Assembly (NCBI GenBank): GCA_053919585.1
Contig: CM132795.1
Origin: Euprymna scolopes
Lineage: Eukaryota
DNA: 64,000 bases
Strand: one strand, 5' to 3'
Positions 4,847 through 41,972 of this stretch are shown here, one piece after another. How positions within the stretch are numbered: position 1 is the stretch's first letter; each line of letters begins with the position of its first letter. The notes under the pieces were generated by a model, which ran no database searches, was not told the DNA's origin, and saw only the letters and a list, made by a program, of their open reading frames with translations. A program made the position numbers and the translations under genes.

Positions 4847-4881
<35 letters not shown>

Positions 4882-6089: not shown

Positions 6090-6140
<51 letters not shown>

Positions 6141-6141
<1 letters not shown>

Positions 6142-6283: not shown

Positions 6284-6385
6284 ACTAGCCCTACCTACGT
6301 ATTGATTACTGTTAAAGTAAATACTTAATGATTACTCATAAATTTATAATTTCGTATATCAATTTTATGTGAGTAAATGAAGAAG

Positions 6386-6426
<41 letters not shown>

Positions 6427-10383: not shown

Positions 10384-10423
<40 letters not shown>

Positions 10424-10742
10424 TGAGCCTGCGTGTGAGATTTTATTAGCTTAAGTCACATAAAGCTGAACATCTTGCAAGGCTTATGTCGGAAATTGAA
10501 GTTATTATTTATTCCTATACTATTTTTTGTCAGGTCATATGTACTTACGTGTGAAATGCGTCTACATATATATATATTTGTGTGTATGTTTATGTTTTGT
10601 AACTATATATACACAATTGAGAGAGAGAGATATGCGATTATATAGATATGTGTATGCAGATCAACTTAATCAAGGATATTAATCGTCATCACTGACTAAA
10701 ATGAAAAGTCATTTGAATAATAAAATGAGTGTACAATTTTTT

Positions 10743-10763
10743 TTTATTTTTGTCGATTTTATT
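10743..10763 (-). promoter_or_regulatory. Candidate polyadenylation signals for the NF60-type terminal exon
   Basis: Two minus-strand AATAAA hexamers (tttatt at 10743-10748 and 10758-10763), ~370-390 nt downstream of the stop. The AT-rich background makes chance occurrence likely. Confidence 0.35.
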
Positions 10764-11129
10764 GTTTGTAAATTGCGCATATGTTGTTGACTGACATATA
10801 TATATATATGGCATGCAAATATCTACAGTCCCATTGAGAAAAGCGGTATACATTAAACATTTGGTTTTACTAGGTAAAGAAAACTTTTTTTCAGCTTTGG
10901 CAAAATGCTTATAAAGCCTTGCCATTAATTGTTGCATGTTTTTCATTGATTTCGTAAAGTCACTTCAGTTGTTTTTCACATTTTTTTCAATATTTTGTAG
11001 TCGTAATAGCAATAATAAAAGTTGTTGTTTAAGTAAATATTGTCCAGAAGAAATGTTTATATTGGCTGTCATATTTTTCTCTCTCTCTTGCTTTTTTCAG
11101 AATTTGTTTGCCAAATAGTTTTGGGGCCT

Positions 11130-11230
11130 CTAATCCGATGAACCGATGGACTTTTTCTCCTCGCTCACTGTTCGGCGTTCCGAGGAGGACGAAGAGGAGG
11201 AAGAAGAAGTAGTAGTAGTAGTAGTTATTC
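11130..11230 (-). CDS. NF60: Terminal coding exon (NF60-type C-terminus)
   Basis: Not in the ORF track. Acceptor acatatttcAG|GA (phase 1, G|GA = Gly). Encodes ITTTTTTSSSSSSSSSERRTVSEEKKSIGSSD then TAG at 11130-11132, resembling the recalled squid NF60 C-terminus. Confidence 0.88.
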
Positions 11231-12702
11231 CTGAAATATGTAAATTATTTTAGGGTGTCAGAGGAGGAAGTTTACATTGATCTCTTCAAATAGCGAAACA
11301 TAAGTATAAGTAAGTATAAGGCAAAAGTTATGTAATAATAGGAACATTAACATGAGTTACAGGTGAAAGGTCAGTAGAGTAAGTTAGAGATGGATATAGA
11401 TATGTAAGAAAAAGACAAAGAGAAAGAGTGGCGTGCACAAATTTATCCCGAAAAGAAATAGCAGAAGTCATGCGATAAAATTTCGTTGGTTTAATAAAAA
11501 TATATGCATATGTAAAAGAAATAAGCTGTTTCTATTGTAGAAGCCAAATGTGCAAGTAACTACAAATATAAGATTAATATATATATGCATACACACACAC
11601 ATATATATATACACATACACATGTATATACGTTATATATACTGCTGTGTTTAAACTGTATATACATGTATATATAAATATATATGTATATGCATATATAT
11701 CTATGCATCTGGTGATTGCCACTCCTTTACAGAAGAAGACTATAAAGAAAAAGATTCCTAAGTAAATTAGATTTAACTAGATCATGTTTAAATACCGATA
11801 ATACTGTTAATATTAGTACTAAGCACAGATATTGATAGTAAGAAGAATGGCTCAGTAAATTAATATATAAATATATACATATTGGAATAAGTAAATTTAT
11901 AAGAATGAAGACATTTACAATAATGAATATATTTTACAATCAACGTTGCAAATAATAGACAGGGAAATGATGAAATGTGTTTGAATGATTCGTTTAGTAA
12001 ATTCCTTCTTTGTGTAGCTTTCATAGAAATATCACACTGAGAGACAGAGATAGAAAGAGAAAGGTGTTAGTAGATGTTACTTGAATCAGGAGTATACTTT
12101 TTCTTTTGTTCTCCGAACGCCAGGATCTTCGAGTGTTGAATATGTGAAGTCTTGACTATTTCCATCGTAAATAGTGTTATTTCTAATCTGACAATTAGCA
12201 TACACATACACATTGCTATGTATGCATACTGACACGAAGTATATACAAGATAAACATATAAAAAGTACATGCACATATATTGACATATACATTTATAGTT
12301 ATGATTAACTACACGCATACACACATGTATATATTGCCCATATTTTTTGTATATATATATATATATGTATGTATACGTAGACTACATTAAATTATATATC
12401 ACGTGTTTGTTCGCAGGAATATATACACATGATTTACTTGCAAGATTTTTTATATGCTATAAGCCCGTAATCTGTATATGTGCACTTTGGTGCATTTCTA
12501 TTTCAATAGAGTAATAAAATAGTATATAAGCATGTTATATATAAGTATATATGTAATGTATATATGCATGTATTTTGATATCTATCTGGCGTTGTATTCA
12601 GACGTACACTCGATTATAACGATTCATTAGCAGGAACATCGACTTTTGACTTATGGTCGTTAATTTTTGGTTGTTGTATTTTAGTTTTTGTCTAATACGC
12701 AC

Positions 12703-12812
12703 CACCTGTGGCTTCATAGCCGCCCTCCGACCTGGTCAGTATCGTAGACAGCACCTCTGCCTCGTTAGGTCTGGCTCCGACAACTTGTTCCACTATCTGC
12801 TTCATCCCAATT
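12703..12812 (-). CDS. NF60/NF70: Short alternative tail exon (NF60/NF70-type)
   Basis: Not in the ORF track. Acceptor gttgccaacAG|A (phase 2, AG|A = Arg) and donor G|GTGCGT (phase 1). 110 nt, encoding IGMKQIVEQVVGARPNEAEVLSTILTRSEGGYEATG, which matches my recollection of the start of the squid NF60/NF70 tail. Confidence 0.9.
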
Positions 12813-14469
12813 CTGTTGGCAACAAACAAACAATCAAAGAAAAATTATAGGAAATAATTACCCTTCTTTTGATCCCATAGTTGCGCAGGGTAAACGAGTA
12901 ACTATAATCTTATTATTATTATAGTTTATTCGTCGGTATTCAGTATTTCTTCCTTCCTTCCTTTCTTTCACGTTCGTTCTCTATCTCTCCAGAGTAATGG
13001 AAAAAGAAAATGACTTCAAATACCTGAGTTACCTGTGTTTAGTAATTTAGTTTTAAACACCGGTGTCCATTGCTGTTGATGTTCTTGAATATTTTTCGTG
13101 CAATCTGACCTTTTTCTTGTGATATGTTTACCTGTTGGTCATTACTTGTTTCATTTACCTGTTTGGTTCCTTTGCCCGGTGTAGAAAACTTTCAAATATA
13201 CACATGTAGACATTCTATATTTAAACATATAAATGGTACTAACTATCTAAATGAAGAAAACCTTTGCAGGCATGTGGTCTAAGATCATGTAGCAGTTGGA
13301 ATACGGGAGGAGACACACAAGTTGTATGCATATATGTATACGTTAAATTGTTTGATTTGTGTATTGTTTATTGCGTAATACTGATGTGTATATAAATATA
13401 ATTCTTGTAGCTTGGATAATTAAAGTAGAAATATATCATTGTAAATACAGTTTTATAATACGCTTTATTGTTTGCATTTTGCTCTCGAAATATATTCATA
13501 TTTTAAATTAGTTTGATATACTTACGTTCTAAATATAAATACTATATTTTTTATGTCGGCTTTCAACTTAATGTTTATATTTATAAAAGAAACTTGCAAT
13601 TAAAATAAATACTTTATTTCCTTATAATCGTGTAAGTTTATTATTGACACATATATCAGCAACGCATACGACTTTGAAAATATAGAACAATGAAAACGAA
13701 GAATACACTTGAGAACGCCGACGTGGCACATTGATTCATATTAATAGCTATGAGAATAAATTAAACAAAAGTATAATAACTATGATATTGTCTGGATAAA
13801 AGATGTAACTAATCATCTTTTTTATATTCCTATCATATATGTATTTAACTATTTATTATTTATTTAAAAGTAGACTAAAATGAGAACTATTTTAAGAAAC
13901 GTTGAAATACTAGATTCTAAGACTTCCTTTATAAATGAACTCTTTTTAGTGATTAGATAATTTTGAATCAATTAATCAATATTATTTAATTATTATTTCC
14001 TTAACTTATCATTTGCAATAAACAATTCGAATATATGTACTTAATACCTGAATAATATTGTTGCTTCTATAATCCTGAAATACATAATTCATGTCGATAA
14101 AATATCAAACAAGAAATTTATAGACTTACAAACTGATAAAACGAAAAAGAGAAATCAAAATAAGATGAAACAATAAGATAATTTCACATAAAACATTAAG
14201 TTGAGTCTTTCCTTCCATCTGTCTGTTCGTCTACGAAATGAAAGCAAACACCAGATAAATTAGAAAAACGTTTGTTCTTTACAAACGTATGAACGTATCA
14301 AGTCAGTGAAAATATGGGTAATACGAAAATGATTCGTCACGATAATTTATCACGTCAAAAGTTGGAGAGTCAACGTATGTACATGCGTGTGTATGTATAT
14401 GTGTCTGTGAATATGTATATATGATCAAGCTCATATATTCATGCATACAGAAGCATATACATAAACGTA

Positions 14470-14951
14470 CATTATTCAAACACATTTGATTGAACAAGGC
14501 AGTTTTATTCTTTTTCCCCGATTTTACTGGATATCTTTTCGATTCGACGAGCAGTCTTTTTTATTTCAATCGGCATATTGTACAGAATTGCGCCCAAAAG
14601 TTGTTGTTCAGCAATATTCTACTCAAGCGTTTTCTATCGGTGCGTCCGATTATCATCAGGAATGATTGTTGTTGTTGTTGTTGTTTTCTTGTCCTTTTCC
14701 TTGAAGGCTTGGTGTATTTATAGTTGTTGTTTTTTGTTAAAGGTGGGTGCAGGATGGTTAGGGGCGAATTATTTTTAGTTTTAATTTACATTTTTTATTT
14801 ATTGTTTATTTAACTTCTTGTTAGTTATTAAATGCTGTTAGTACATTTGTCCCGGTGTTAAATGAGATCCGGTTAAAATCGATAAGATATCCAGAAAAAT
14901 CGGGAAAAAAGTATAACTCTGTCGTGTTCAATCAGATGTGCTTGAATAATG
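14470..14951. mobile_element. Fold-back/MITE-like element, ~480 bp, with imperfect ~75-bp terminal inverted repeats
   Basis: Left end CATTATTCAAACACATTTGATTGAACAAGGCAG...CCCGATTTTACTGGATATCTTTTCGAT versus reverse complement of the right end CATTATTCAAGCACATCTGATTGAACACGACAG...CCCGATTTTTCTGGATATCTTATCGAT. No clear TSD. Confidence 0.75.
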
Positions 14952-16316
14952 ACTTGCTACCAAAATATAAAAATATAAACGTACATATACAACATAGTTA
15001 CATATTTGTATGTTTACTCATACATATAGATAAATATGTGTACAAAATAAACGTCATATTCCTGATGTCGTACTGATGTATTGCAATTATATTTAAATAT
15101 CCCTATCAATCAATCTTTGTCTCTCTATCGATGCATCTATCATTCGATCTCTATATACAATGAGTTATTTGAAGACTAGCTCATGTAAAGGCACCAAAAA
15201 TAAAACGTACAGTAAAATAATAAGAAAACATTGTATTTGAGGTGAAATACATAGTTACTTTACTAATCAGATAAATGTTGAGCGAACGTGTAATTTTTTT
15301 ATTAATTAATTGCAAAATTATAAATACAACTATTTGTATTCTGACATTGAAAACTTTTTGACGCCATTTTATCATGAACTGATAATTAACTAAGCTCAGT
15401 TTAACGAGATGTAGAAATACTTAGGTTCCTATTAAATAAGTTATAAATAATAATAGAATACATAAACCATCAGAAAATAGTAATATTATGAATATATTTA
15501 CCAATTGCATGGCTATTTACATACCCTCGTTTTTTATCTTGTTATTATGATTGTTTTACTGAGGAGCAGCTAATGTGTTATATTAATTTCACAACACACA
15601 CAACACACACGCATATTTATGTATATATAAGCGATTTATCTAATTATCTAGTCATTTTAATACATTTTATTACATATAAGGATAAAAAACCGTATTAAAT
15701 CCACCAAAAGCATAATCTAAAGTTCCTTATTTGAATATTATAATCGTTTAAATATAAAATATGATTAATCACGAAAGCAAGTAGAGTGATTAAGGCAAAA
15801 TAAAATTGATTTGGGTTTTATCAGAAATTAGTGAAACGTGTTATTGTCTTTTTTATGAGCAACTTGTAACCTCACGTGTTCCAACATCTACGCTGATACA
15901 AATACATAAAAATACGAATACAGCACAAAAAATTGCAGCACCAAAAAAATTAAAAAAAAAACAAAAATTCACAACCAAAGAGAAATAAACAAAAAAAAAA
16001 CTGATTATGCTTCGTTTTTCCTAAATTAAAATTATTTTATGTAAATTATTAAGAGCGCGAAGCTCAAAGTACCTATTAGTGTGCGAAACATTGCCGCCTA
16101 TCCTTGTGTTATGATGAAGGTGCACGGCAGAAAAGCAAGTAAAATAATAAAATAAAAACGTCAATATACTTCACACAAAAGAGATGAAAAAATAAAAAAA
16201 GAAACAATAAACATTGAGAATTTTGCGGGATTCAATGGGGGTATGTGCAAGCGAGAGCAAAACTTGAGAAAATAGCCATGCAAACAAAAAACCTTTCGAT
16301 GCTTTTAATAATCTTC

Positions 16317-19300
16317 TTATACAGTGAAAGCTGGATGCATTTCCAATAGTTTAAACATACCACCCTCCCCATCTGATCTCCTACTTGTAGATAGTTTGGA
16401 TGATTCGCTCGTTTCGGACTTCTCGGAACCTGAAGACTTTAAGGATGTTTTAGTAAATACATCACTTTTGCTTGTAAAGATCTTTGCAGCAGACGATTTC
16501 ATTTCGATCCTGGCATCTGTTGGAACTTCCTTCATCTTTTCTAAGATTTCTTTTTCAAAATTCGATTCGATAGATTTAAATGAAAACCCATCATTAGCTG
16601 TAGCTGCGTCGTCATCGGACAGCTTTTGATTCTTAATTATCTTCATGCTACTTGTGTCGTTAAAGAAATCTTCATGGTTGACACCATTGGTAAGCTGCGA
16701 GACAATTGACTTCGCCAAAAACTTAGTACTCTTACTGCTAGTCTTATGTTCAGAGAGATGAAATTCTTCAACTTCAGTGGCAGTTGACGAATCCTGAACG
16801 CCGTTGTATTCGATATGTCTATTGTTCGACAACTGAGATATCTTAACGCACCCAGTACTCTTCTGCGAGTCAAATGGTGAAGATGAGTCAATGATGTCAA
16901 GATCAGATGGACGATAATCACCATTATTATCGTGATCGCCATTTCTCGAAGACACTGGGAATTTACTAGAATCAGGCGAGCTGGCCTGCCTTTCTGACTC
17001 ATCTTTTTCAGAAAATACAGGGGATTTATCTGATTTGCCATTTTCAGAAGTTACTGGGAACTTACTAGAGCGTGTCGACTTTCCAAAGTTTTCTTGCACA
17101 TCTTTTATCTTAGAAGATTCTAATGTTAAGGATAACTCAGAAGAGTTTTTTAATATTACTGCAGACTTAGCAAAATCTTCTGATTCAGCTTCTTGGTAAA
17201 GTATCGGAAACTTAGCCGATTCTGATGTTTTATGGGACCTAACTGTGTCTTCTCGTTCAACTTCTATGGAAGTCACTAAAGATTTAAAACCTTTTGAAGT
17301 TATTGGAGATTTAGCGGAGGTATCTGAAGAGAGCGAGAATTTAGCATGGTCCAATGTTACTGGAGATTTAGTTAAGGTTTTAGATTCACCTTCTTCGGAA
17401 GATACAGGAGCTTCTGATATTACAGGTGACTGGACGGGCTTTTTTGATTCAGCTTTTTTGGAATGTATGGGGGACTTAGGTAAGTCTGATCTTACTGTAG
17501 ACTGGGCGGATTTTTCTGATTGCGTTTTTTCCGAAATATCAGCAGACATTGCCGGTTTTGATGTAACTGAGGATTGTGTAGATTTTTCGAATTGCAGTTT
17601 TTCAGTAAGTACAGTGGATTTAAATTGTTCTAATGTTACTTGAGATTGGACGGACTTTTCTAATTCGGCTATGTCAGAAGTTACCTGCAACTTGGCCGGA
17701 TCCGATACCATTGAATATCTAGTGAGATTTACAGACTCATCTTTCTCAAAAGGCACAGATGTCTTAGAATGTTTATATGTTATTGAGGATTTAGCACTAT
17801 CTGATTCATACTTTTCGGAATATTTTGCAATCTGAGACGTTTCTGAATTTACTAGGGATTGAATCGACATGTCGGATACAGCTTTTTCATGTGATAGAGA
17901 GAACTGAGACGGTTCTAAGAGTACCGGGGACTTTGCGGACTTTTCTGATTCAGCTTTTTCAGAAGCTACAGGAGATTTAGCGTGTTCGGAAGTTACTGGG
18001 GATTTAACCGACTTTTCTGATTCAGCTTTTTCAGAAGCTACAGGAGATTTAGCCGGTTCTGAAGTTACTGGGGATTTAGTGGGCCTTTCTGATTCAGCCT
18101 TTTCAGAAGCTATGGGGGATTGTGCCGGTTCTGAAGTTACCGGAGATTTAGTGGACTTTTCTGATTCAGCTCTTTCAGAAGCTACGGAAGATTTAGCCGG
18201 TTCTGAAGTTATAGGGGATGTTACGGACTTATCTGATTCAGCTTTCTCAGAAGCTACCGGGGATCGAGCGTGTTCAGAAGTTACTGGGGATTTAGCGGAC
18301 TTTTCTGATTCAGCTTTTTCAGAAGCTATCGGGGATTGAGCCGGTTCTGAAGTTACCGGAGATTTAACGGATTTATCTGATTCAGCTTTTTCATAAGCTA
18401 CGGGGAATTGAGCGGATTCCGAAGTTACCGGAGATTTAGCGGACTTTTCTGATTCAGCTTTTTCAGAGGTTACCGGGGATTGAGCCGGTTCTGAAGTTAC
18501 TGGGGATTTAGCAGACTTTTCAGATTCAGCTTTTTCAGAAGCTACAGGGGATTGAGACGGTTCTGAAGTTACCGGAAATTTATCGGACTTTTCTGATTCA
18601 GCTTTTTCAGAAGCTACAGGGGATTTAACCGGTTCTGAAGTTACTGGGGATTTAGAAGACTTTTCAGATTCAGCTTTTTCAGAACCTACAGGGGATTGAG
18701 ACGGTTCTGAAGTTACTGGGGATTTAGCGGACTTTTCAGATTCAGCTTTTTCGGAGGTTACCGGGAATTGAGCTGGTTCTGAAGTTACCGGAGATTTAGC
18801 CGACTTTTCTGATTCAGCTTTTTCGGAGGTTACCGGGGATTGAGCCGGTTCTGAAGTTATCGGGGATTTATCGGATTTTTCTGATTCAGACCTTCCGGAA
18901 GCTACGGGGGATTGAGCCGGTTCTGAAGTTACCGGAGATTTAGCGGACTTTTCAGATTCAGCTTTTTCAGAAGCTACAGGGGATCGTGCGTGTTCTGAAG
19001 TTACCGGGGATTTAGCGGACTTTTGTGATTCAGGTTTTTCAGATGTTACCGGGGATTGAGCCGGTTCTGAAGTTATCGGGGATTTAGCAGACTTTTCAGA
19101 TTCAGCTCTTTCAGAAGCTACCGGGGATTGAGCCGTTTCTGAAGTTACCGGAGATTTAGCGGACTTTTCAGATTCAGCTTTTTCAGAAGCTACAGGGGAT
19201 TGAACCGGTTCTGAAGTTACTGGTGATTTAGCGGACTTTTCTGATTCAGCTTTTTCAGAGGTTACCGGGGATTGAACCGGTTCTGAAGTTATCGGGAATT

Positions 19301-26433: not shown

Positions 26434-28992
26434 CTGCAGGAGGGAGATAAATATCTTTGTCCATCCACCCACGTATAACACAATAGCCCCATAAAAAGGG
26501 TACATCAATAGAAGCAGTAAAGAATTGCTTTAATTAGCTTAGGGGAAATCTTAAAAGGGGCAAATTTTCACCTTACCCATATCTCAGTAGGCACAATAAA
26601 CATAAATGAAAAGAGTTAGATGCAGTTCTTTTCGAATTGTTAAAATAGCAGACGGCAGAAAGGCAGCAGTAACGTTAAATGTTACTTTTCAGAGAAAAAC
26701 TCATGGTGAATTCTAAGTACTTTCAAATGAAAAATGTTTTCTAGTTTAAGAAATGATTTGCAATTTAATTAGCTCGATGTGTTGCCATTGTTCAATGAAA
26801 CTAAAGTTTTTTTTAAACTGTTTTGTTGCATTTAAAATTTCTTACTTTTTTTTTTTACATTTAACAGAAGACAAAGTGCTATTATAAAATTGTGCGGATT
26901 TCGATTAAATAATATCAAGTATTTGTAGAAATGTGAATATAACACCCACGAAGACATTTTTATATTGATTTATATGTTTTATGTGTTATTTTAAGATGTT
27001 TGGGTGGAGAGACCCATATTTATATGAACATTTTATTTTATAAATGAAAATAGAATATAAATAAAAAGATCGAATTAAAAAATAGAATCATTCTAAACAC
27101 ATAAGAATGTAGTTGTTTCACGTTTGGTTAAAGGGCATAGTCAGCATNNNNNNNNNNNNNNNNNNNNNNNNNNNNNNNNNNNNNNNNNNNNNNNNNNNNN
27201 NNNNNNNNNNNNNNNNNNNNNNNNNNNNNNNNNNNNNNNNNNNNNNNNNNNNNNNNNNNNNNNNNNNNNNNNNNNNNNNNNNNNNNNNNNNNNNNNNNNN
27301 NNNNNNNNNACGCCACAAAAAATAACGATAAAAGAAACACATTTGTATAAAACTCGTGTATGGATTTATAGCAATAGAGTAGAGAGTTTAATGGCGAGTA
27401 ATGTTTAACTGATGAACATAAGTAAATTATCTATTATGGTATTAATAATATTAGCACACACTCCAAGATGAGTAATTATTATCATTTATATTATTTCATT
27501 TATTGTCCTAAATTGTTGTCATATTCAAAGTGTTTCGACCGTTTCACTCTTCCGCCTTCTACAGATGCCGGTTTTCTTTTTTTATGAAAGTTCATGTTCC
27601 ATGATTTTTAAATATCTAGTATTAGTTTATTTTGTTTCATTCTTTCATTATGAATATTTTTTTAAAAATTTAGGTAAAATTTTTCTTTGGTCAATATAAT
27701 GTATAATACTAACAATATATACATTAAATATTAAATTAAATTAAATATTAGATATTACATATTAAAAAAGTCGTGGTATGGAAATAATCAGTCTTAAGAA
27801 GATAACGGCCGAAACCCCACGAAGATTCAAGGCATGTATAACAGTGTTAAACATGCAAATAATATCTATAATAAAAGAAAGTGTTTGTAAAATATATGCA
27901 TAAATGAAACAATGAAATGTTATGTAAAGCAATTCTCGTCGATAATACGTCATTTTAGTAAAGCGTTCCATCTACAAGCAAGGTGAAATAAAACATCAGA
28001 ACTCAATGTACACTAAAAAATGTTGATAAATATAAGATAAGAATATACAACATTATTGTGAGGATATTATCTGATGTTATTATATTACAACAATTCAATT
28101 AAATCTAACGTTTATGATGAGTTGAATACTTTCATCTTCTTTTGAGGATGCTCTCCGTTTTAAACTTTCAGAAGATAATTATATTTTCTAATCGATCGAA
28201 GCTAAATGTATATTCATAAATTTAAAGTAAAATCGCAATTTTTCTGTATTCCTTATTTCCTCTTTTCTGTGAACAATTCTTGTAATTCTTTTGCTTCATA
28301 CAGATGGTCAGATTTAATAAACATTCGTGTTCTGTTGGTTTATTTATGTCTTTTTTAAAGTCTTACATTCTAATTTATTATTACACTGAAATATGCAACA
28401 TTTTTACTTTACGCAAAAGCAGAAAAAAATTGTCGCTCTAATTTCATATCGATTACGATCTTTTATTAATCATTTCCCCAAAAAGTAATGATGAAACTGT
28501 ACTTTAAAACGCTAATAAGGCATTTAAAAACGCTAATTTGTTTCCTTTGTAATAAAAAGGAAACATCTGGGTCGATTAAAAAAAAACGGTTTACACCATA
28601 ACAACTACTTTATGTGGATATTATGAGAAAAACACAAAACTGTTAGATTATTTATGGAAATATATAGATTTTGTTCATATTTTTTTTCTCAAAATAAACT
28701 ATTCGTTTTCATTTGTACCGGATGTCAATTTAAACCTTATACAAATAAGTAAATAGGAAACAAATTAATTTCTTTTTAAAATGCGTGAATTGGAAGTACT
28801 TTTCAAGTTCAGCTTTTCCAACATGAATTTACAAACACTTATTGTGAATACTTTTATAAAAGTCTTTTTAAGGTACAAAAATATAAAAAAGCACATATTC
28901 TCATTCTATATATGAGGCGCAATTAATCTTTTACAATATTGAAATATTGATACGACATTAAAAAATTGAAGTAAATAAAAGTATATTCAAAG

Positions 28993-29023
<31 letters not shown>

Positions 29024-29551
29024 GGAAATCTCAAATTATAATTATATTATAGTAAATTCAGAAGTTTCGTGCTCCAAGTTAATATATATGTGATATGATA
29101 TGAAATACTTAATTCTGACTTAAGCTTCAAAGAATAATGGCAAGCAAATCTGTTAGAATCTGCATCTGTAATCTTCAACAAAAGAACAATTAAATAGTAA
29201 ATTTCAGAATGTTTGAGACAAGGGTTGAGGTGTAGATTGCAAAATCCAGCAATAATACCGCACAATTTTCACGGACATGAACGCTTTTTGCCGGCGTCAC
29301 ATATTACAAGAAATTGTTGTCTATCTTCACATGTACGAATCACACTTAAAGCTGACATAGAACAGCTACATTTATTTCAAAGTCATAATTAGAATATACT
29401 TTTTAATTAAGAATGGAAACCCTCCTCTCGTCGCTGTATTATGTTTATTAAATAAAATGCACTGTAAGCACTGTTTTTACATCGTATCGAAACCAGCTTT
29501 AAGGTGACCAACGCAAATTTATTATTAAAATTTAAAGATGATAACATAGCA

Positions 29552-29598
<47 letters not shown>

Positions 29599-29601
29599 TA
29601 T

Positions 29602-29855
29602 ATATTATCAAATAATTTTGATAGGCTAAACACAAAACATCTTGTTTATTGATCGCTTTGGTTGGTGTTTAATATCAAGCTAAAAATAAGTACTGAGGGA
29701 AGCATAATGATGTACTTTCCAATAAAGAAGAGTATATAAATTTCATAATATTCACTTGATCTTAAAAGAGATCAGAGTAAATAACGAATTAAATAAAAGA
29801 CCAACAAACAAAACTTGTTTATGTAAATTTAATCAAAATTGTTTGAATAATAATA
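29602..29855. mobile_element. Degenerate fold-back element whose termini resemble the 14470-14951 element, flanked by (AT)n on both sides
   Basis: ATTATCAAATAATTTTGAT on the left and ATCAAAATTGTTTGAATAAT on the right, with further weak internal complementarity. Confidence 0.45.
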
Positions 29856-29870
29856 TGCTGGCTAAATATT

Positions 29871-29938
<68 letters not shown>

Positions 29939-31369
29939 AAGTAATATACATTTACATATACATACAATTATATTTTTATGTATATGTATACATCTTTATG
30001 CATATCTAAGGCAATATAGGGAACATAGTCGTGGGGAAAAGTATTCATTTCTTGGATTGTTTGTCCATCGTTAAAAATATCACACCAAATAAGTGTTTTA
30101 AACAGATTGATTGAAGAATGTTCCATGTGTTGTTTATATAGAAATATTATTTCTTAATAATTTAAAACCACTAGATGTAATATACTTTCTCCAAAACTAT
30201 TTTCGCAGATATTACTTCTCTGTACATTTTTCAGACCTCAATNNNNNNNNNNNNNNNNNNNNNNNNNNNNNNNNNNNNNNNNNNNNNNNNNNNNNNNNNN
30301 NNNNNNNNNNNNNNNNNNNNNNNNNNNNNNNNNNNNNNNNNNNNNNNNNNNNNNNNNNNNNNNNNNNNNNNNNNNNNNNNNNNNNNNNNNNNNNNNNNTA
30401 AGTACAGCAACGATGCTAACTGCTGAAGGATATGTCTTGTCTTAGTAGTCACCATGGTTGGTTTATATTATAAAACACATCTTGTTCTTTAATCTATAAT
30501 GGACTTGTTTTTTATTTATTTTTCATAATTTTATTTTTAAGAATGAATCTGATGAATTTTTCTTTTTAAATGTAAGGATTATTAAAACGATAAATGATTT
30601 AAAAAGAATTCCTCAAAAATAAGTGGTGACATGGCGTTAATATTATTATATAATTGATTATTTTCTTGGTAGGTATTGCGATGGGAAGTCAGACACAACA
30701 AGAGAAATAAGACGGAGGAAAATAAATATCGAAGTACAGAAGACACAAATACAGAAACGATAGTATACTTGAAAAGCTTAATAAGTTTGACGATTACGAC
30801 ATTATTTTTTTTTAAATCGAAAATAGTTATTTATTTTGGGAAGGAAATAGGTATGGGATATGTGGGTCGTTTAAAATTTAATTAATTTGAGGAATATATC
30901 AAAATATAAGAACATAATACAGAAGTACTTTTCTATTCTTATTTCTGTTGTGTATAACAGTTTTTGACGTACAAATACATTTGTAAAAGTGCAACAAATT
31001 ATTCTGATTGTATGTGTATGTAATTTATAATTTGACCCTGTACATCATTATTTATATACGCTCCAATCTTGTGTACTTAATTTGTAAAAGTAAATATCAC
31101 ATTATTTAAAAGTAAGTAAATGTCTCTTAACGTTTTATTATCCATTACTTTAATTTTTTTATATAAGTAGTCTTGATGGAAATGGTTCTTTGCCATTAAC
31201 TCTATACTATAGGCATTAAGGTTTGCATTAGATAAAGCGATCGTTATCTACACGCCATAAGTTTTTCAAGACTATGATTCCAGTAAAATTTCAATCCTAC
31301 AGTTCGATGATTACGTTATTATATACACTTATGACGAAGATATACAATTAAATAATGTTTCACTTTGTT

Positions 31370-31372
<3 letters not shown>

Positions 31373-31446
<74 letters not shown>

Positions 31447-31526
31447 GCATACATCTAATAAAATAGTGTTATAAATAATGTTATATATAATTGCATACAT
31501 CTAATAAAATAATGTTATAAATAATC
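31373..31526. repeat. (AT)n microsatellite followed by a 46-bp tandem duplication
   Basis: (TA)~35 at 31373-31443, then ATAATTGCATACATCTAATAAAATA.TGTTATAAATAAT twice. Confidence 0.85.
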
Positions 31527-34500
31527 CGTAGAAAAATATATTCATTTTTTTCTTATGAAGAGATTAATATGGAAGTATAATTTCACAGTTATTTATTAAA
31601 ATACAATTTGAATACGATCTAAAAACAGCTATACGGCTCTAATAGAGTGTAACAATTAGAGCACGGCTTCTGAAGTACGAGCAATTAATTCTTTTCGAGG
31701 CATACAAACTATTTTCACAGTTACCTCTTTATATTTTTATTCACAAAAATTATTATTACACCTAATAATTCAACCTTAAATATGTGACATTTTCTATGAT
31801 TGAACATACCAATTATATCATCGACGTCTCTTGTATGTGTGCGAAAACAGCTGAACGCAAAGGACAGCAGAATCAACCATAACAACTTGATCTTAGTCCA
31901 TCGTGTATACACATAGTTTAAATCTATAATACTACTAATTAATATTTTACCATTTATAGCATGAATAAAAGATTTTACCATTTCTATTACTAATGAAACG
32001 TTATCAAATAAAACAATGTTTTTACATCGAAATTCGAAGTGTTACAAATATGTGTCAACTTTTTATGAATATTACACACATAAATCTGTACGCATCAAGG
32101 ATACATTAAATTATATGAATTATCTTTATATATATAAATTATCCTTATGTATATGATATGAACTTATACCAATATACGTAATTCTTTGAAATTACTGTCT
32201 GCATAGCTACCTATCGGTTGATATTAGATTTTTACTATTTTGTACAAAATTAATGGCAATTTTAGTTTATCTTTATATAGCATAAGATAAGGTGTTGCTA
32301 TTGCAGTTTAGCGACAAATGAAGTTGACTGAAAAAGTAGAATCAACGTTGAAAGCCGATGAAAATTAGTAGAAAACAACTACCGATTCTTTTAATTAGAT
32401 TTTAAAATTAATTTTATGATTATTTTATTATTAGACTAATAATTAGTAAGTTTATTCGTTGATAAGAAAATCCGACAAAAAACTAAAGTCCAATAATAAG
32501 TACACATCAAAATAAACCATATATTAGCTATCTTGGCGTTATTTGTGTGCTTGCGTGAATAAAAGATACTTAAGCATTTTTCACGATATACACATACAAC
32601 ATTTAACTAGCAGTAGTATAGTATATATATACATATATAGCTATATAAGTATTGACCTATATGCTTACAATACAACCATCTATAATTATACATATATACG
32701 TGTGAGTGTATCCGTATTCATGATTTTACATGTTTATAAACGCCTGTATACATCTATACACATATGGAAAGGATACATATACAAATACATTTACAAATAC
32801 GGACAAACATTGTTGAATTATAAATTAGCGTCAGTATTATGTCTGCGATGATGATTTCATAATGTTATATTGTTTCGTATTTCACATTTAAAAACAAAAA
32901 CAAATGGTCATTTCAACCGTGTGTTCATTTGTTGTATTCGTGGTTGGATCGACAAACAACTCACGTCTGTTATTATGTTTTGTCGACGTCTATTTTAAAT
33001 CTCCTAAATGTGTGTTCCTTTTTCTTGTGTATAATGCCCGCTTTGTACATTGCACATACTTCGTGTGTGTGCAAAGGTAAATAGTATAATTAAACAATTA
33101 CAAGCGCATATACACATAAAAATACGTATTAATACATTTACATACTATATACATATATATATACATATATATACATATATATATATACATATATATAATA
33201 TGTATATATTACGTGTCTATTTACATAAGATGTTTGCTGTTAGTGAGTATTTAAGCAGACGTTTCTGTATTAGATACCCTAAATCTATGTATAGATGCGT
33301 GTACTTATGTGTGTACTTAGTTATAGTTTTTACGTTTAAATTTGCATTTTCTTTTTTGTTCTTAATTAAACACATTCATCAAATTCATTCTTTTTTGGAA
33401 GGAAAGGAATAAATATGTGACCCCGACGAAGCAAAAGGTCTTCCTAATGCATATAGTTTTTTTACGTCATTTTTTTTCTATTTCGTAAAGAAAGCTGAAT
33501 GAGAGTAGAAGTGAGATGTTCTAAGGAATATATTCCCATGCATTTCAATGAATGTTGTACAACATCATTGTCTCCATTGCCTATTTTAGAAAATAAAATA
33601 GTATTCTGTAAATAGTTTTTCATCAATGCAAAATAATTAATACGCTTTTTTATAATTAATACTTACACTCAACCCGTATAGAAAATGAATACAATTTCAG
33701 CAATAACTCCAGGATATAAAAATAAATAACAAAATATACATTTATTATTTATTTTAAAATATTTAATCAATAAAAACTGTGAATTCATTGTTTTCTATAA
33801 TTTGGATAATCGTTTATTATTATATGTATTAAAAAATTTTCACGCTGGTATTAGATAAATTCTGTAGATTTATATAAATATATCTTAGCCGCACTTTAAT
33901 TTCAGTTAGGTTTCGAAACAATTACAATACGTTTCTTTCTCAGACGAATATTTCTTTTATTTTGGTGGCAAAGCATACAAGTCAGCTGCCGGGCAACAAA
34001 GACATATGATGTTACACAAGGACCGGATATATGTACCATTACCAAGTAATATTTTATGAGATAGTNNNNNNNNNNNNNNNNNNNNNNNNNNNNNNNNNNN
34101 NNNNNNNNNNNNNNNNNNNNNNNNNNNNNNNNNNNNNNNNNNNNNNNNNNNNNNNNNNNNNNNNNNNNNNNNNNNNNNNNNNNNNNNNNNNNNNNNNNNN
34201 NNNNNNNNNNNNNNNNATATCTCTATTTATAAACGTATTATTCAATTCATCATTATTTTTCGTTTTATTTAAAGATCTTTTTAAAATAGTTTATGGTCCG
34301 GGAATAAGCTGACAATTATAAAACGAAGCACCGTTGACTGTCAAAAAGAAATACGGAGTATTAATCGAATCTAAATTAAGCTTTTTTCTAAGTGGTTTTA
34401 TATAATATATACTAATGCATTGATAAAATAATAATATAGAGTTCGATTAATTGAACATTCCGTATTTCTCCTGTGTAAACAATACACCCCTAGTTAGTCA

Positions 34501-36248
34501 CGGCTACTCTCGTTCACTTTCTTTCGTTTTAATACATTTAATTTGTTCAAAAATCAATCTAAAATCAAAGTGAAAATGAACTAACAAAATAAGAACAGTG
34601 TATGAATCAGATTGAGAAATTAGGCCATGTTTCTTTCGCTTTTTCATTTACGTTAATTTTTCGCATGGAAACATATTATCGAATAACATATTTACTTATG
34701 TTTGTATCAAAGGAATTTAAAGACATTTTCTCTCATATATTATAATAGCCATTAAAAATGTACTCTCCAAAATTATATTCGTAAAAAATTCCTCAAAGCA
34801 ATTATTATTTATAAAAATATCATATGATTCTCTGGATGTAAATATATATTGAATACAAATTCTTATTCGTCGCTTATGCATATGCTTTTTTCTGGTAAAT
34901 TAATAAATAAGGTCATTATTATTGACATATTCCGGGAAGGGATATAGTTCTTTAAAGAAGCTTGACTAAAGGAATCGAGTAATATAATCTATTGAATCGC
35001 CTTAAAAATAGTTTGTCTAGTTGTAGCTTGTAATATGTTTAAGCTTCAAGCTTCCGGTGTGTATTTCAACATCTCCACTCATGAAGTCAAACCCTTCTGC
35101 ATTTATGGCTTCATCAGCCAATCATGCTCTTATGTGAATGAACCCAGTTTTGTCATAAATTTTCTTAAAAATCAGGTTTCTGTTGTAGGATTTATTGAAC
35201 TGAATGTGTTTATTTGGTTTGGGAGCACAATCCAATTATAGTAATTTACCTATGCTTTGAAAACAAATCAAAAATGAACATCTGTTTAAGAAAATATATT
35301 TTACCATATAAAATTACTTTGGAGTTTCGCTTCTAACATAAATTAAATTTAGCATTCTTTACAAAAGAAAATAGCCTTATTCTAAACTAATTCTAAGCAT
35401 TTAAAATGCCGAATATCAAGTTAATTCTGGTTGATTTCCAATGTTTGAGAAATAATTTTATTACAATGAATATATACCACAAAATGAAGGAAAACTATTT
35501 GATTTTCTCAGTGTCTAACTATGTAAATAAATAGGAAAATAACTTTAGTATCTCAAATTTTCTATGAGTCCAAATTAAAACTTATTGAACTCAATTTTAT
35601 GGATCAAATGAAATGATAAAACCTTTGCAGTTCAGACCTTGCTAAATACGTTATTCTTTGTGCGAACGCGTTCAACTGATTTGACTTGCTTTATTTTTCT
35701 TGCGCTTCACGTATTCATAATTAAAATACATTGAAATCTTTTGAAGTGGCATGCAATAGATTACTGTTAAATGAACGTATTTAACTATTATAAAAATATG
35801 AAGAGAAAATGTTGTTTTTAATAGTTGTTTATAAAAGCGATTATTTAATATTTTATGGCATAATAATGTATCTTTGTTTTCTCAATTGATAAGGACAACG
35901 TGAAATGAAGAAAATTGCACTGACACATGCCAAACAAAACGTTATTTCTCGTTCCATATTAAATTGAAATGTTTAACGTGTGTTAATTTTACAAGTTAAT
36001 CTGAATAACTTTTAGAACAAAATTCGTATTAAATGTCCATAGTAATAATAATTATCACGAATCAATATTAAAACTTGCACTGCGATGTTGTAATTCTAAA
36101 TGCATAGGATTGAAAAAGATTGAAGCAAACATAACAATAAGTGTCCGAATCTTATTTGAGGGTTGATTTAAGATATTATACTCATTTTCAATAATTACCT
36201 CCAATATATGTATCGATCTATTGATCTATCGATCTATTCATTTCTATC

Positions 36249-36295
<47 letters not shown>

Positions 36296-36539
36296 GTATG
36301 TGTCTGTTTGTGTATGAATTTCGGTGATTATCCCCGTGATTTATTCATTAACCATACCATAATAGACGCCTTAATGCAAACACGAATTTGGTTCGTGATT
36401 TGTTGTATACCAACGGCTCTCATCTGAGGTTTAGAAGTGCGTATTTTTCAAACCATATGCACCTTGTTTAGATGGGAGATCAATCTAGATACCAATCGTA
36501 TTGTACCAATCAGCATCTAGAGAGCTCTATTAATGACTT

Positions 36540-36950
36540 TTGGTCTACGTTTATAGCCAAAAGTTGAAAATTGTCGGAAACTTTGTGCACCAGGACAGCA
36601 CACTATGAATGGCTGATACACTCGTGAGTAAATGCCAAGACTACTTTTGTTAAACTACAGAGACAATTAAGATCAAAGGCTGCAATTTATTCTTGCTATT
36701 CGCTCTTCTTTATATGAAACCTCAAATACAGAAATTAACTTAGACGTTGCCAGCAACAATGCCCAAGGAGAATCCTTGGCGTCCGTTCGCAAACATTTCT
36801 TATTAATGTTAAGGTGTTAGAACAAGTTTGATATCAAAGAATAAAATTGATCATATTTAGCGTATAGATTACAGTGGGGATGGCACATTGTGATAATAGC
36901 CGACGAGCGACTTCTTAAGCAGCTCTTCCATGGCGAAATTATTGAATAAA
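36540..36950 (+). mobile_element. Decayed RTE-clade LINE fragment (end of RT and downstream region)
   Basis: Conceptual translation gives KLKIVGNFVHQDSTL (cf. LEVVDKFVYLGSTL), QQQCPRRILGVRSQ (cf. HQRCLRRILGIRWQ) and LQWGWHIVIIADERLLKQLFHGEI (cf. LRWAGHVVRMDDxRLPKQLFYGEL), in the expected order, with frameshifts. Confidence 0.75.
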
Positions 36951-38955
36951 ATTATCGGGTTCAAAACAAAAGTCTTAACAGGCCTAAAATAGCAACCTTA
37001 ATGCAGCTGCTTAATGTTATCTCATAAATAGTCTAGCAATAACAGTGCTCGAATACGATTTGTAATCACGAGAGAATATTGCTGTTATTCGTCTCAACAG
37101 AAGACCCACTAGAGAAGGTAGTCACGATGCGTACAATATCAAAAATATTCAAACAATATATGAATGTACATTCTCTTTTGAGATAGCCTTTTGCATTTTG
37201 CTACTTTGCCCAATAAAGTTGATGTTCTCGTGTATTGTATTATATCAATAACTGCAGAATTGTGTTCTGACAGCGATTTATAAATACGCGCTTATTTTAA
37301 GGTATATGATTTTCTAATAATTAATAACATGCTCATCATATAATGAACACTTGCATTATAGTAAGAACGTAGTACACGAAAGAGAAGCAATTGTACCTGA
37401 TTAAAAAATCAGTCCGGCTATTTAAAATTCAATCAAAATACATACATACATACATATGCTTATCCCAGGGTATTTTTCGAATATGTGTCATTCCTGCATG
37501 ATTTTCACAATACTCCTTTATGCTAAGTAATTATATAGTATTTGTTAAACATGTTAAATAATACGAAAAGAGAGCACGTGTCAGAGCATTTTTCTATTTA
37601 TATTTTTAACCTTTAACATACAATTTTCAATAACAAATAATGATTCACAAATTAGAAATGCGTTCTTGAATGTCTATTTAAGTTTAAACAAATGATTTTA
37701 ATTTTGAATCTTTTCAGAATAAATAATAAGCTTATGTTGACTTAGCCAAAATTATTATAAAACTGATATCATCTTATTAAGACTTTGATTCTTTTTAACA
37801 TTTGAACTAAATTATAATTATAATTAAATGTTGGCCGTCATAGATTTAGCTTGAAATTTTCAAAAAAACAGCGACTCTTCACAAATAAGTTTTTTTTCAG
37901 ATAATCTGAATTTAAAAATCATCTCTCTGATATAACCGTTTAAAATCGTAATCTTAATCTAATGTTTTAGAGTAACTCCTGTTAGCAAATTAATATTGTA
38001 AATATATTTTTCATAAATATTTTCTATGTGCCGATGAAAAAAAATCCCCTTTTTGGATATATTTTACACCAAGTTTAAAACAGTATTAATAGCACATATA
38101 TAATGAAGAGTAATTTAAAGTATATGAGAATGTATAATTTATATCGGTTAGCAAGTTTCATTTGGTTTGAATACTATTGTTCAATAATCTAGAGAATCAT
38201 AAATTGCTTTTATACTCCAAACAATGAACACAGATACGACATATAATCGTGTATAAGTCGACATGATATGCAATTCGACCTTGTTTTTACAGCCAAACAT
38301 ATATCGGATGCCCAAAACTGTTGAGCTGCTTCTCCTCTTTCGTGGTGCATACTTTGATCAAAACATAATACAACTATTACTCATGTATATGTTGATCACT
38401 TTTCAAGATTTTGACCCGGAAGTTGACTTTCAAAGTACGATGTATACACGAGTATATACGGTTTATATTCCCTTTTAAAATTTCAAACAAAAATTCATTT
38501 GTCGTTAACGAAAAATAGAATGACAAATAAAAAGAAACGTCAATTGAAACATTAAAAAATCTTAAAACATAACGCATATTCAAAATTAGACTTAGGTTAA
38601 AATGTTTTTAAATGAACTGAAAGAAAAAGTTAGAAACATTAAAAAAGAAATGTTTTCATAATTGAAAATTTGTATTACAAAAATGGTTTAGTTATTAGCA
38701 AAATATTTATACAAGATTAGTACTTGAAAATAAAAAGATCTGTAAACAAAATAATCATAAACCTGACTATTAGATACAAAATTAAAATGGAACAAATAAA
38801 ATGAACATAATTTAGTTTGTAAATTCATAATCAATTCTTGTTCGTTGTCCGCGATGCATATCTAGTCGTATCTCTTATTCAGTCGTTATAGAAATTCGCT
38901 CTGATCTTATATATAAGCGTTTATGCGATAAAAAATAACGATCAAAGACATGAAT

Positions 38956-39032
<77 letters not shown>

Positions 39033-39161
39033 TAAGCAAAAATAAATATTTCCTGGTAGACATACTGGAACGCATTTCTGCAACTGAAGATCAATAATTT
39101 CAAAAAATAATTATTTTAATTATTCAAAAGTTGGTTAGCAGATTGAAAAGGAATCTCTTAC

Positions 39162-39382
39162 CTGCTTTCTTCACCTTCTAACAATTTTCTGTAGGCAGCA
39201 ATTTCCAATTCTAGGGACAATTTGATGTCCATCAAATCCTGGAGCTCCTTGAGAATGCTTTCCATTTCACCACGAAGTTTGGTTATTTCTTCTTTGTACT
39301 GGCAGCTCTCAAGTTCATTCTGTCTGTCCTTTTCTTCCAGTTCGCGCAACAAATCTTGATTGGTTCTTTCTAATTGAGCATT
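39162..39382 (-). CDS. NF60/NF70/NF220: Neurofilament rod exon ending with the IF helix-termination motif
   Basis: tttttttAG| acceptor, AG|GTAAGA donor. 221 nt, phase 0-2, NAQLERTNQDLL...LMDIKLSLELEIAAYRKLLEGEES(R), the canonical intermediate-filament signature. Confidence 0.97.
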
Positions 39383-41810: not shown

Positions 41811-41972
41811 CTTAAGATTGTAGTAAGCCTCGATATCGCCTCTCATCTGATCACATTTAGCGTCATACTCTTGTTGGATGTCACGGATTGCCTGGGCCAG
41901 TTCGTTTCTCCAGAACTCACGGTTTTCGGCAGTTGTGTCGCGATAAGCCAATGCAGCGAGTTCTTTCAGTTC
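41811..41972 (-). CDS. NF60/NF70/NF220: Neurofilament rod exon (linker L12 / coil 2a)
   Basis: cttcatAG| acceptor, |GTGAGA donor. 162 nt, phase 0-0, ELKELAALAYRDTTAENREFWRNELAQAIRDIQQEYDAKCDQMRGDIEAYYNLK. Confidence 0.95.

What the first reader, a model, noticed from the sequence alone, without database searches (positions are those of the whole stretch)
11130..39382. Phase-enforced mutually exclusive switch between a 110-nt and a 10,073-nt neurofilament tail exon
Seen: the last rod exon ends in phase 2 (AG|GT at 39162). Both the giant exon (acceptor at 26433) and the small exon (acceptor at 12812) start in phase 2 and restore ...EGEESR-I. Both end in GGTG|GT phase-1 donors (16361 and 12703) that fit the phase-1 terminal exon at 11230 (G|GA = Gly). 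Joining giant to small reads G|AA TTG GGA TGA, a stop ~100 nt upstream of the last junction. Established: squid NF60/NF70/NF220 come from one gene by alternative processing, and such stops typically trigger NMD. Inference: the two exons form a mutually exclusive cassette that changes side-arm length ~90-fold while keeping the same C-terminal peptide, with double inclusion policed by NMD.
Basis: partly seen in the sequence, partly recalled or inferred. Interest (0 to 1): 0.8.

Follow-up and report, generated by a model that had tools for sequence, protein, structure and literature searches.

The report
Neurofilament gene with alternative tail exons
This is the tail end of a mollusc neurofilament gene that makes short-tailed or giant KSP-repeat-tailed proteins by alternative RNA processing, as already known from squid; the proposed "cassette switch policed by NMD" is not borne out, because RNA reads run straight through the giant exon's supposed donor to the exon's own stop codon.

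Summary
These are the rod exon ending KLLEGEESR in phase 2 at 39162, a 10,073-nt open exon (26433-16361), a 110-nt exon (12812-12703), GGTG|GT phase-1 ends on both, and a terminal exon at 11230. The three assembly gaps lie in the intron, not in any exon.

RNA from four public runs supports 39162>12812 and 12703>11230. No run shows a joint at 16361. Contigs from three studies run unbroken through that "donor", through the in-frame stop at 16317, and on for 3.5 kb to the small exon's acceptor. Several of these runs hold almost nothing of the upstream intron.

So the giant exon behaves as an alternative tail with its own stop, not as a cassette sharing the C-terminal peptide. The small exon also has a second downstream partner exon that lies outside the window. 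The result is three alternative tails, the pattern published for squid NF60/NF70/NF220.

The junction 39162>26433 could not be tested. NMD policing is unsupported and unnecessary. This scan had already noted the giant exon on this same stretch (s1-244905). Verdict: an ordinary member of a known arrangement, of modest interest.

The parts
59730..59916 (-). upstream rod exon (coil 1B part), context only
   Evidence: Open segment ...QYHQIDQEQIARQNQQLADLEGEISMLRRSIESLEKEKMRQSNILAKMNDELEKLRM, bounded by acag| and |gtaagt.
41811..41972 (-). upstream rod exon (coil 2 part), context only
   Evidence: Bounded by catag| and |gtgaga. Pfam Filament positions 143-201, E 2.3e-4.
39162..39382 (-). last rod exon, ends KLLEGEESR in phase 2; donor AG|gtaaga
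   Evidence: Its last letters appear as loose ends joined to 12812 in runs X1, X2 and X24.
26434..39161 (-). intron between the rod exon and the giant exon; holds the three assembly gaps
   Evidence: N runs at 27148-27309, 30243-30398 and 34066-34216. The stretch 30399-34065 is held at under 0.05-0.10 of sampled words in most RNA runs that hold 0.7-0.86 of 11100-16500.
   Evidence: No stop and no N. 118 KSP; S/E/K/A/P rich. 72-nt repeat arrays at 17905-22994 (70.7 copies) and 23980-25031 (14.6 copies). Acceptor cag|G at 26433. The junction to 39162 was not tested.
16317..16360 (-). read-through codons (GMFKLLEMHPAFTV) and stop TAA 16319-16317: the likely true end of the giant tail's coding sequence
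   Evidence: RNA contigs X1 record 8, X2 record 16 and X9 record 22 cross it unbroken. A relative's contig also reads through, with its stop 2 codons after GG.
12813..16316 (-). transcribed stretch after the giant exon's stop (3' UTR or retained sequence reaching the small exon's acceptor)
   Evidence: Continuous contig cover at depth about 170-210 (X1) and 18-34 (X2), against 0-9 in intron 12702-11700. X24 reads lie in the sense orientation. At least 260 nt after the stop are 68-81% identical to the relative.
12703..12812 (-). 110-nt small tail exon (R)IGMKQIVEQVVGARPNEAEVLSTILTRSEGGYEATG(G)
   Evidence: Depth 1,086-83,238 (bin means). Joined upstream to the rod exon and downstream to 11230 (X1, X2) or to an exon not in the window (X9, X24).
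11231..12702 (-). intron between the small exon and the 11230 exon
   Evidence: Near-zero depth at 11700-12700 in X1 and X2. One unspliced contig in X9.
10420..11230 (-). alternative 3'-terminal exon: (G)ITTTTTTSSSSSSSSSERRTVSEEKKSIGSSD, stop TAG 11132-11130, 3' UTR, AATAAA at 10447
   Evidence: Depth 950-7,585 in X1/X2. Contigs end about 10412-10421. The 3' end is approximate.

Best explanation
This is the 3' half of a lamin-like mollusc (probably cephalopod) neurofilament gene on the minus strand. After the last rod exon (donor 39162), the transcript takes one of two acceptors. Choosing 12812 gives the 110-nt exon, which is then spliced either to the terminal exon at 11230 (a 69-residue tail) or past it to a further exon outside the window (a longer tail beginning ...GG-DSQISMKMMR). 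Choosing 26433 (inferred, not shown) gives the giant KSP-repeat side-arm. That exon is not spliced at 16361. It is read through for 14 codons to its own TAA at 16317, giving a tail of about 3,371 residues (354 kDa). The RNA then continues at least 3.5 kb, up to the small exon's acceptor. The tails therefore exclude each other at the protein level simply because the giant exon carries its own stop. No shared C-terminal peptide and no NMD policing are involved. It is unresolved whether the giant-tail mRNA is polyadenylated inside 16317-12813, or runs on through the small exon and uses the downstream splice and poly(A) sites. Depth rising towards 12813, and contigs ending exactly at 12812/12813, lean to the second.
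For: Shown: frames, phases and junction sequences. IF rod end by Pfam. Loose ends at 12815/12810 carry the rod exon's last 27+ letters in X1, X2 and X24. Loose ends at 12702 carry the first letters of the 11230 exon in X1 and X2. Six X24 reads and one X9 contig join 12703 to ATTCCCAAATCTCAATG..., which is absent from the window. No joint is listed at 16361 in four runs. X1 record 8 (3,039 nt), X2 record 16 (2,992 nt) and X9 record 22 cross 16361 and 16317 unbroken. By contrast, a real splice branch (the donor at 12703) does break a contig with a 30-nt overlap (X9 record 17 ends at 12732). Depth over 12813-16699 is about 170-210 in X1, against 0-9 in intron 11700-12700. Runs X2, X5, X8, X9, X11 and X12 hold 0.71-0.83 of 11100-16500 but are not listed (holders need 0.05) for intron 30399-34065; X4 holds 0.81 and 0.10. 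So the post-stop stretch is in stable RNA, not merely pre-mRNA or DNA. A relative's contig (L001) also runs through GGTGGTATGTT. Its stop falls 2 codons after GG, so the read-through peptide is not conserved in length. Nucleotide identity stays 68-88% for at least 260 nt past the stop. Established knowledge: squid NF60, NF70 and NF220 share one rod and differ in their tails by alternative RNA processing (Szaro et al. 1991 and Way et al. 1992; titles seen in the reference lists; details from my own knowledge).
Against: Contigs drop rare variants, ten loose ends were not shown, and only 38 raw reads were laid, so minor or tissue-specific use of 16361 is not excluded. GTG|GTATGT is a respectable donor, at least as good as the used GTG|GTGCGT at 12703. 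It is conserved in the relative and sits in exactly the phase of the 11230 exon. GTGGTRNGT occurs only at these two sites on this strand of the window. It is not known whether the relative's contig comes from RNA or DNA. No poly(A) site for the giant form was located.
Confidence: 0.65

Rival explanations
1. The giant and small exons are mutually exclusive internal cassette exons. Both are spliced from GGTG|GT to the 11230 exon and give the same C-terminal peptide. Double inclusion produces a premature stop that is removed by NMD. The read-through RNA seen here would then be a slowly spliced (detained) nuclear precursor.
For: Phases fit exactly, and the double-inclusion stop is real. The donor-like GTG|GTATGT is conserved in a relative. 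The 9-mer GTGGTRNGT is found only at the two exon ends. The read-through peptide is not conserved in length (14 codons against 2), as expected for intron sequence.
Against: No joint at 16361 in four runs, and three contigs are unbroken across it. The post-stop stretch is covered as deeply as the giant exon's own 3' end. The 11230 exon is not the obligate partner even of the small exon. The two exon ends are not homologous beyond the short match: local alignment score 16 against a shuffle mean of 16.5. EJC-type NMD rules are not established for molluscs (my own knowledge).
Confidence: 0.12
2. The giant open frame is not joined to the rod exon at all. It would be a separate nested transcription unit in the intron (the ORF has an upstream ATG at 26492), or a non-functional expanded repeat.
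For: 39162>26433 was not observed here. Neither the N-terminal 400 residues nor the giant protein searched over that same region found any protein homologue.
Against: A 10-kb frame without a stop in 29% GC surroundings cannot be chance. A strong polypyrimidine/AG acceptor sits 20 codons after the last upstream in-frame stop. It is in the one phase that continues EGEESR-I. The KSP-repeat tail on a shared rod is what squid NF220 is (Way et al. 1992, title). The 3' part is transcribed in the sense direction.
Confidence: 0.05
3. The cover of 12813-16360 is only genomic DNA or ordinary pre-mRNA contamination and says nothing about the mature giant-tail mRNA.
For: Run X1 also holds 0.54 of the upstream intron, and X10/X13 hold about 0.7. 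In X9 the depth is tiny compared with the 83,238 of the small exon.
Against: X2, X5, X8, X11 and X12 hold 0.71-0.83 of the 3' stretch but are not listed for the upstream intron. In X1 and X2, intron 11700-12700 of the same gene has depth 0-9, against 170-210 and 18-34 here.
Confidence: 0.1

Closest known systems
Squid (Doryteuthis/Loligo pealeii) neurofilament gene giving NF60, NF70 and NF220 (Szaro et al. 1991 J Biol Chem 266:15035; Way et al. 1992 PNAS 89:6963)
   Same: One lamin-like rod is shared by several proteins that diverge right after the rod end. There are two short tails and one long Lys-Ser-Pro-repeat tail, made by alternative RNA processing. Here there are three alternative continuations after 39162/12703, and the 69-residue tail has about the size expected for an NF60-type tail (my own recollection of protein lengths).
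   Different: Here the genomic layout is visible. The heavy tail is a single exon of more than 10 kb encoding about 3,370 residues (354 kDa). As I remember it, that is several times the NF220 cDNA tail. Orthology to the squid cDNAs could not be tested, because their sequences were not retrievable with the searches left.
Alternative 3'-terminal / composite exons (e.g. immunoglobulin mu secreted vs membrane, calcitonin/CGRP)
   Same: The choice between an upstream block that carries its own stop and downstream exons yields proteins with different C-termini. A potential donor inside the upstream block is read through.
   Different: No poly(A) site of the giant form was located. RNA cover continues to the next exon's acceptor, so the event may instead be a choice between two acceptors 13.6 kb apart.
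Mutually exclusive cassette exons with frame-based NMD surveillance (e.g. vertebrate PKM exons 9/10, FGFR2 IIIb/IIIc)
   Same: The two candidate exons are in the same phases, and double inclusion would create a premature stop.
   Different: The giant exon's donor is not seen in use. The two exons are unrelated in sequence and differ about 90-fold in length. The downstream partner is not shared.
Vertebrate NF-H / NF-M
   Same: KSP-repeat, highly phosphorylatable acidic side-arm on an IF rod.
   Different: In vertebrates these are separate genes for each subunit. Here one gene supplies both the core and the side-arm forms.

Membership tests
Squid-type neurofilament gene (NF60/NF70/NF220 pattern) | Intermediate-filament rod ending in the ...YRKLLEGEE(S/N)R consensus | tested here: met
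   Pfam PF00038 positions 242-312/313, E 2.8e-13, 50.6 bits against a cut-off of 40; sequence.
Squid-type neurofilament gene (NF60/NF70/NF220 pattern) | Lamin-like coil 1B with the 42 extra residues | not tested
   Only three rod exons were located. The full rod was not reconstructed.
Squid-type neurofilament gene (NF60/NF70/NF220 pattern) | Heavy form with a Lys-Ser-Pro repeat tail | tested here: met
   118 KSP in the 3,359-residue translation; 24-residue (72-nt) repeats in about 85 copies.
Squid-type neurofilament gene (NF60/NF70/NF220 pattern) | Several tails joined to one rod by alternative RNA processing | tested here: inconclusive
   39162>12812, 12703>11230 and 12703>another exon are seen in RNA. 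39162>26433 was not testable after the single read-laying run.
Squid-type neurofilament gene (NF60/NF70/NF220 pattern) | Sequence orthology to the published squid cDNAs | not testable with these tools
   Length limits and word competition kept full-length proteins out of all three protein searches. The papers are not held.
Mutually exclusive cassette exons policed by NMD | Both exons internal, each with a donor that is used | tested here: not met
   The 12703 donor is used. No joint at 16361, and contigs cross it unbroken in X1, X2 and X9. A minor form is not excluded.
Mutually exclusive cassette exons policed by NMD | Both exons join the same downstream exon | tested here: not met
   Only the small exon joins 11230, and it also joins a second exon outside the window.
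Mutually exclusive cassette exons policed by NMD | Double inclusion shifts the frame to a premature stop | tested here: met
   ...GEGELG*. This holds at sequence level only.
Mutually exclusive cassette exons policed by NMD | The double-inclusion transcript rises when NMD is blocked | not testable with these tools
   Needs an experiment.
Alternative 3'-terminal (composite) exon | Read-through of the internal donor to an in-frame stop | tested here: met
   Contigs cross 16361 and 16317. The same holds in the relative's contig.
Alternative 3'-terminal (composite) exon | Own poly(A) site downstream of that stop | tested here: inconclusive
   The first AATAAA motifs, at 15671 and 15303, are crossed by contigs. 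Cover continues to 12813, and no pile-up of molecule ends was reported.

The most novel reading that the evidence does not exclude
The giant-tail mRNA is made by choosing an acceptor 13.6 kb upstream of the small exon's acceptor. The 'exon' then runs from 26433 all the way to 12703 and is spliced on to the downstream exons. Its stop at 16317 would lie 3.6 kb upstream of one or more exon junctions, yet the mRNA accumulates. That would be a natural transcript escaping (or regulated by) NMD. It might be linked to the A-to-G changes seen at the first two bases of the small exon (12812/12811), which appear mixed in unspliced RNA and near-complete in spliced RNA.
Probability: 0.3. Interest if true: 0.5.

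Novelty: new member of a known kind. Interest (0 to 1): 0.3.

Why it matters
The locus gives the genomic layout behind a classic observation: squid-type neurofilament core and side-arm proteins come from one gene. It shows that the switch is most simply a choice of acceptor after the rod exon, with the heavy tail carrying its own stop. That removes the need for a frame-policing mechanism. It also corrects the predicted C-terminus of the giant form, which matters for antibody or peptide design and for gene models in cephalopod genomes. The open points could interest people who study RNA processing in cephalopod neurons. They are where the giant mRNA ends, whether it carries spliced junctions in its 3' UTR, and whether the acceptor-adjacent A-to-G changes are editing.

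Tried and rejected
(1) Protein searches with the giant protein over residues 1-400, and with the first 400 residues alone, found nothing. Low-complexity words probably swamped the candidate list, so no annotated or transcript-derived protein could show the 39162>26433 junction.
(2) The exhaustive representative search with the last 347 residues found a single relative, P0001. That is too few to judge constraint on the read-through peptide.
(3) The search with the rod exon returned only genomic single-exon ORFs, with no spliced products.
(4) An exact look-up of the 548-residue product expected from the RNA contig ending at 17964 found nothing on record. The P0002 contig had no DNA available.
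(5) The new partner exon's first 30 letters were searched for in the window with up to 3 mismatches and as 12-16-mers, with no match. No coding-looking ORF lies in 1-9700.
(6) Homology between the two exon ends was tested as a duplicated-cassette idea and rejected: score 16 against a shuffle mean of 16.5.
(7) Folding of the acceptor region around 12812, to look for an editing duplex, was not significant: z = -1.6.
(8) An Rfam scan of the whole window gave 0 matches.
(9) Way et al. 1992 could not be read. Library searches gave only reference-list titles.
(10) The protein-atlas look-up of the rod exon gave only generic IF clusters and no clue to the taxon.
Full report
OBSERVATION

The gene lies on the minus strand.
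- The last rod exon (39382-39162) translates to NAQLERTNQ...LEIAAYRKLLEGEES and ends AG|gtaaga, leaving two bases of a codon. Pfam places it at positions 242-312 of the 313-position Filament model (E 2.8e-13).
- The giant exon begins after ...tatctccctcctgcag at 26433. It is open for 10,073 nt, with no stop and no N, to GGTG|gtatgt at 16361.
- The small exon runs from 12812 (after ...gccaacag) to 12703 (GGTG|gtgcgt), 110 nt.
- Both exons complete the Arg codon and continue with Ile. Both leave one base, which fits G|GA at 11230.
- Joining giant to small gives ...GEGELG-stop.
- The three gaps flagged by the scan's program (27148-27309, 30243-30398, 34066-34216) lie in the intron between 39161 and 26434. 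They do not touch any exon.

One point was underweighted. If 16361 is not spliced, the frame continues for only 14 codons (GMFKLLEMHPAFTV) to TAA at 16319-16317.

WHAT THE GIANT EXON ENCODES

The giant exon encodes 3,359 residues rich in S, E, K, A and P, with 118 KSP motifs. They are organised as 72-nt (24-residue) repeats in two arrays, 17905-22994 (70.7 copies) and 23980-25031 (14.6 copies). With the read-through codons, the tail is 3,371 residues and 354 kDa. GC content is 44% in the exon against 27-29% in the flanking non-coding DNA.

RNA EVIDENCE

Four runs from four studies were used: X1 and X2 (contigs, RNA by their exon/intron depth pattern), X9 (oligo-dT RNA contigs) and X24 (raw single-cell RNA reads).

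(a) 39162>12812 is supported. Loose ends at 12815 and 12810 carry the reverse complement of the rod exon's last letters in X1, X2 and X24 (7 reads).

(b) 12703>11230 is supported in X1 and X2. Loose ends at 12702 read AGTAGTAG...TTATT, the complement of the start of the 11230 exon. The tool's repeat filter masked 11180-11234, which is why this was not listed as a joint.

(c) In X9 and X24 (6 reads), 12703 is joined to different letters, in mRNA sense ATTCCCAAATCTCAATGAAAATGATGCGCG. In frame this gives ...GG-DSQISMKMMR. That sequence is nowhere in the window, so a further downstream exon exists beyond the window's start or in the gap at 9700-9857. In X9 the small exon has a bin-mean depth of 83,238, while the 11230 exon is covered only by one unspliced contig of depth 57. 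There the other partner dominates.

(d) The 11230 exon is a true terminal exon. Depth is 950-7,585 in X1/X2, and contigs end near 10412-10421, just after AATAAA at 10447.

(e) No joint is reported at 16361 in any run. X1 record 8 (3,039 nt) and X2 record 16 (2,992 nt) run from about 17964, the edge of the repeat array, through 16361 and the stop to about 14925-14971. X9 record 22 covers 15549-16545. Where a splice branch really exists, the assembly graph breaks the contig with a 30-letter overlap: X9 record 17 ends at 12732, 30 letters past the donor at 12703. No such break occurs at 16361.

(f) Cover continues beyond the stop to 12813/12812. Depth is about 170-210 in X1 and 18-34 in X2. The next intron of the same gene (11700-12700) has 0-9 in those runs.

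CONTROL FOR PRE-mRNA OR DNA

The second run search used the upstream intron, 30399-34065. X2, X5, X8, X9, X11 and X12 held 0.71-0.83 of the words of 11100-16500. They are not even listed for the intron, where a holder needs 0.05. X4 drops from 0.81 to 0.10 and X1 from 0.86 to 0.54. The stretch after the giant exon's stop is therefore part of a stable RNA in several samples. It is not background.

A RELATIVE

The exhaustive search with the last 347 residues found one protein, P0001 (E 3e-32). It comes from a 987-nt Logan contig of another species (L001).
- It ends ...STSRRSEGEGGML. Its DNA runs through GGTGGTATGTT with TAA two codons after GG.
- The window and the relative are 60-88% identical per 60-column block over the last 300 nt or so of coding sequence, 88% around the exon end, and 68-81% for at least 260 nt after the stop. 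Further upstream, coding identity falls to 37-77%.
- The length of the read-through peptide is thus not conserved, but the nucleotides after it are. That fits a functional 3' UTR. It would also fit regulatory intron sequence, so this point does not decide the issue.
- It is unknown whether that contig comes from RNA or DNA.

INTERPRETATION

The simplest account has several parts.
- After the rod exon, the transcript uses either acceptor 12812 or acceptor 26433.
- The small exon is followed by one of two alternative ends.
- The giant exon is read through to its own stop.

That gives three tails on one rod, which is the published squid pattern. Szaro et al. [quoted passage not shown] Way et al. 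[quoted passage not shown] Both titles were seen, and the details come from my own knowledge. The tails exclude one another because of the stop at 16317. Neither a shared C-terminal peptide nor NMD is needed.

The donor-like GTG|GTATGT is respectable, conserved and in phase. GTGGTRNGT occurs on this strand only at 16363 and 12705.

WHAT REMAINS OPEN

First, 39162>26433 was not observed. It is inferred from four things:
- the phase;
- the acceptor;
- the position of the last upstream in-frame stop, 20 codons before the acceptor;
- the squid precedent.

Second, the 3' end of the giant-tail mRNA is unknown. The first AATAAA motifs after the stop (15671, 15303) are crossed by contigs. Depth rises rather than falls towards 12813. 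Contigs end exactly at 12812 (X2, X9) or 12813 (X1). There is no poly(A) signal in the last 90 nt before the acceptor. This leans towards RNA that continues into the small exon, that is, a choice between two acceptors 13.6 kb apart. The stop would then lie far upstream of later junctions. I rate that reading at about 0.3.

COMPARISON AND VERDICT

This is a new genomic member of a known arrangement. The specific novelty claimed was a phase-enforced mutually exclusive cassette sharing a C-terminus and policed by NMD. It fails two of its defining tests, donor use and a shared downstream exon, as far as they can be tested here. Interest is modest. This scan had already noted the giant exon on this same stretch (s1-244905), and I confirm its frame and its stop at 16317.

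Noticed in passing
window 12811-12812 (minus strand, first two bases of the small exon): RNA differs from the genome: A>G at 12811 (Ile>Val, RIGMKQ>RVGMKQ). This is seen in all spliced contigs of X1, X2 and X9 and in 5 of 6 aligned X24 reads. Three more X24 junction reads have G at both 12812 and 12811. Three states in one sample, and unspliced contigs ending exactly at 12812/12813, suggest A-to-I editing next to the acceptor rather than a SNP. No DNA from the same animals was available. The local fold was not significant.
   Followed up: partly
outside the window (downstream of 10420, or in gap 9700-9857): A third tail. The small exon's donor 12703 is joined in X9 and X24 to an exon starting ATTCCCAAATCTCAATGAAAATGATGCGCG (…GG-DSQISMKMMR), which is absent from the window. 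It is probably the NF70-type continuation. It dominates in the oligo-dT 'mollusc metagenome' run.
   Followed up: partly
window 16080-16316 and L001:740-987: The sequence after the giant exon's stop is 68-81% identical to a relative's contig. That is as conserved as most of the C-terminal coding part and more than the coding sequence further upstream. It may be a conserved 3' UTR element.
   Followed up: partly
window 16320-26432: The predicted tail alone is 354 kDa. With head and rod, the protein would be about 400 kDa. Squid axoplasm has a major phosphorylated neurofilament band above 400 kDa besides the 200-kDa one (abstract of PMC2110134). The giant form might correspond to that band rather than to an aggregate.
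   Followed up: no
window 14738-14919: A short stretch with much higher and composite RNA depth (up to 965 in X1). Many contigs diverge on both sides, and there are odd joints 14620>14738 and 14759>14919. It looks like a dispersed repeat or transposon fragment expressed elsewhere.
   Followed up: no
window 11235-11572: The last 340 nt or so of the intron before the 11230 exon are covered at depth 216 (X1) and 94 (X2), while the rest of that intron is near zero. Possible causes are an upstream alternative acceptor, partial retention, or a start inside the microsatellite at 11573-11706.
   Followed up: no
whole window: There is no Rfam family at gathering score on either strand. Eleven N gaps of 128-184 letters are present.
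   Followed up: yes
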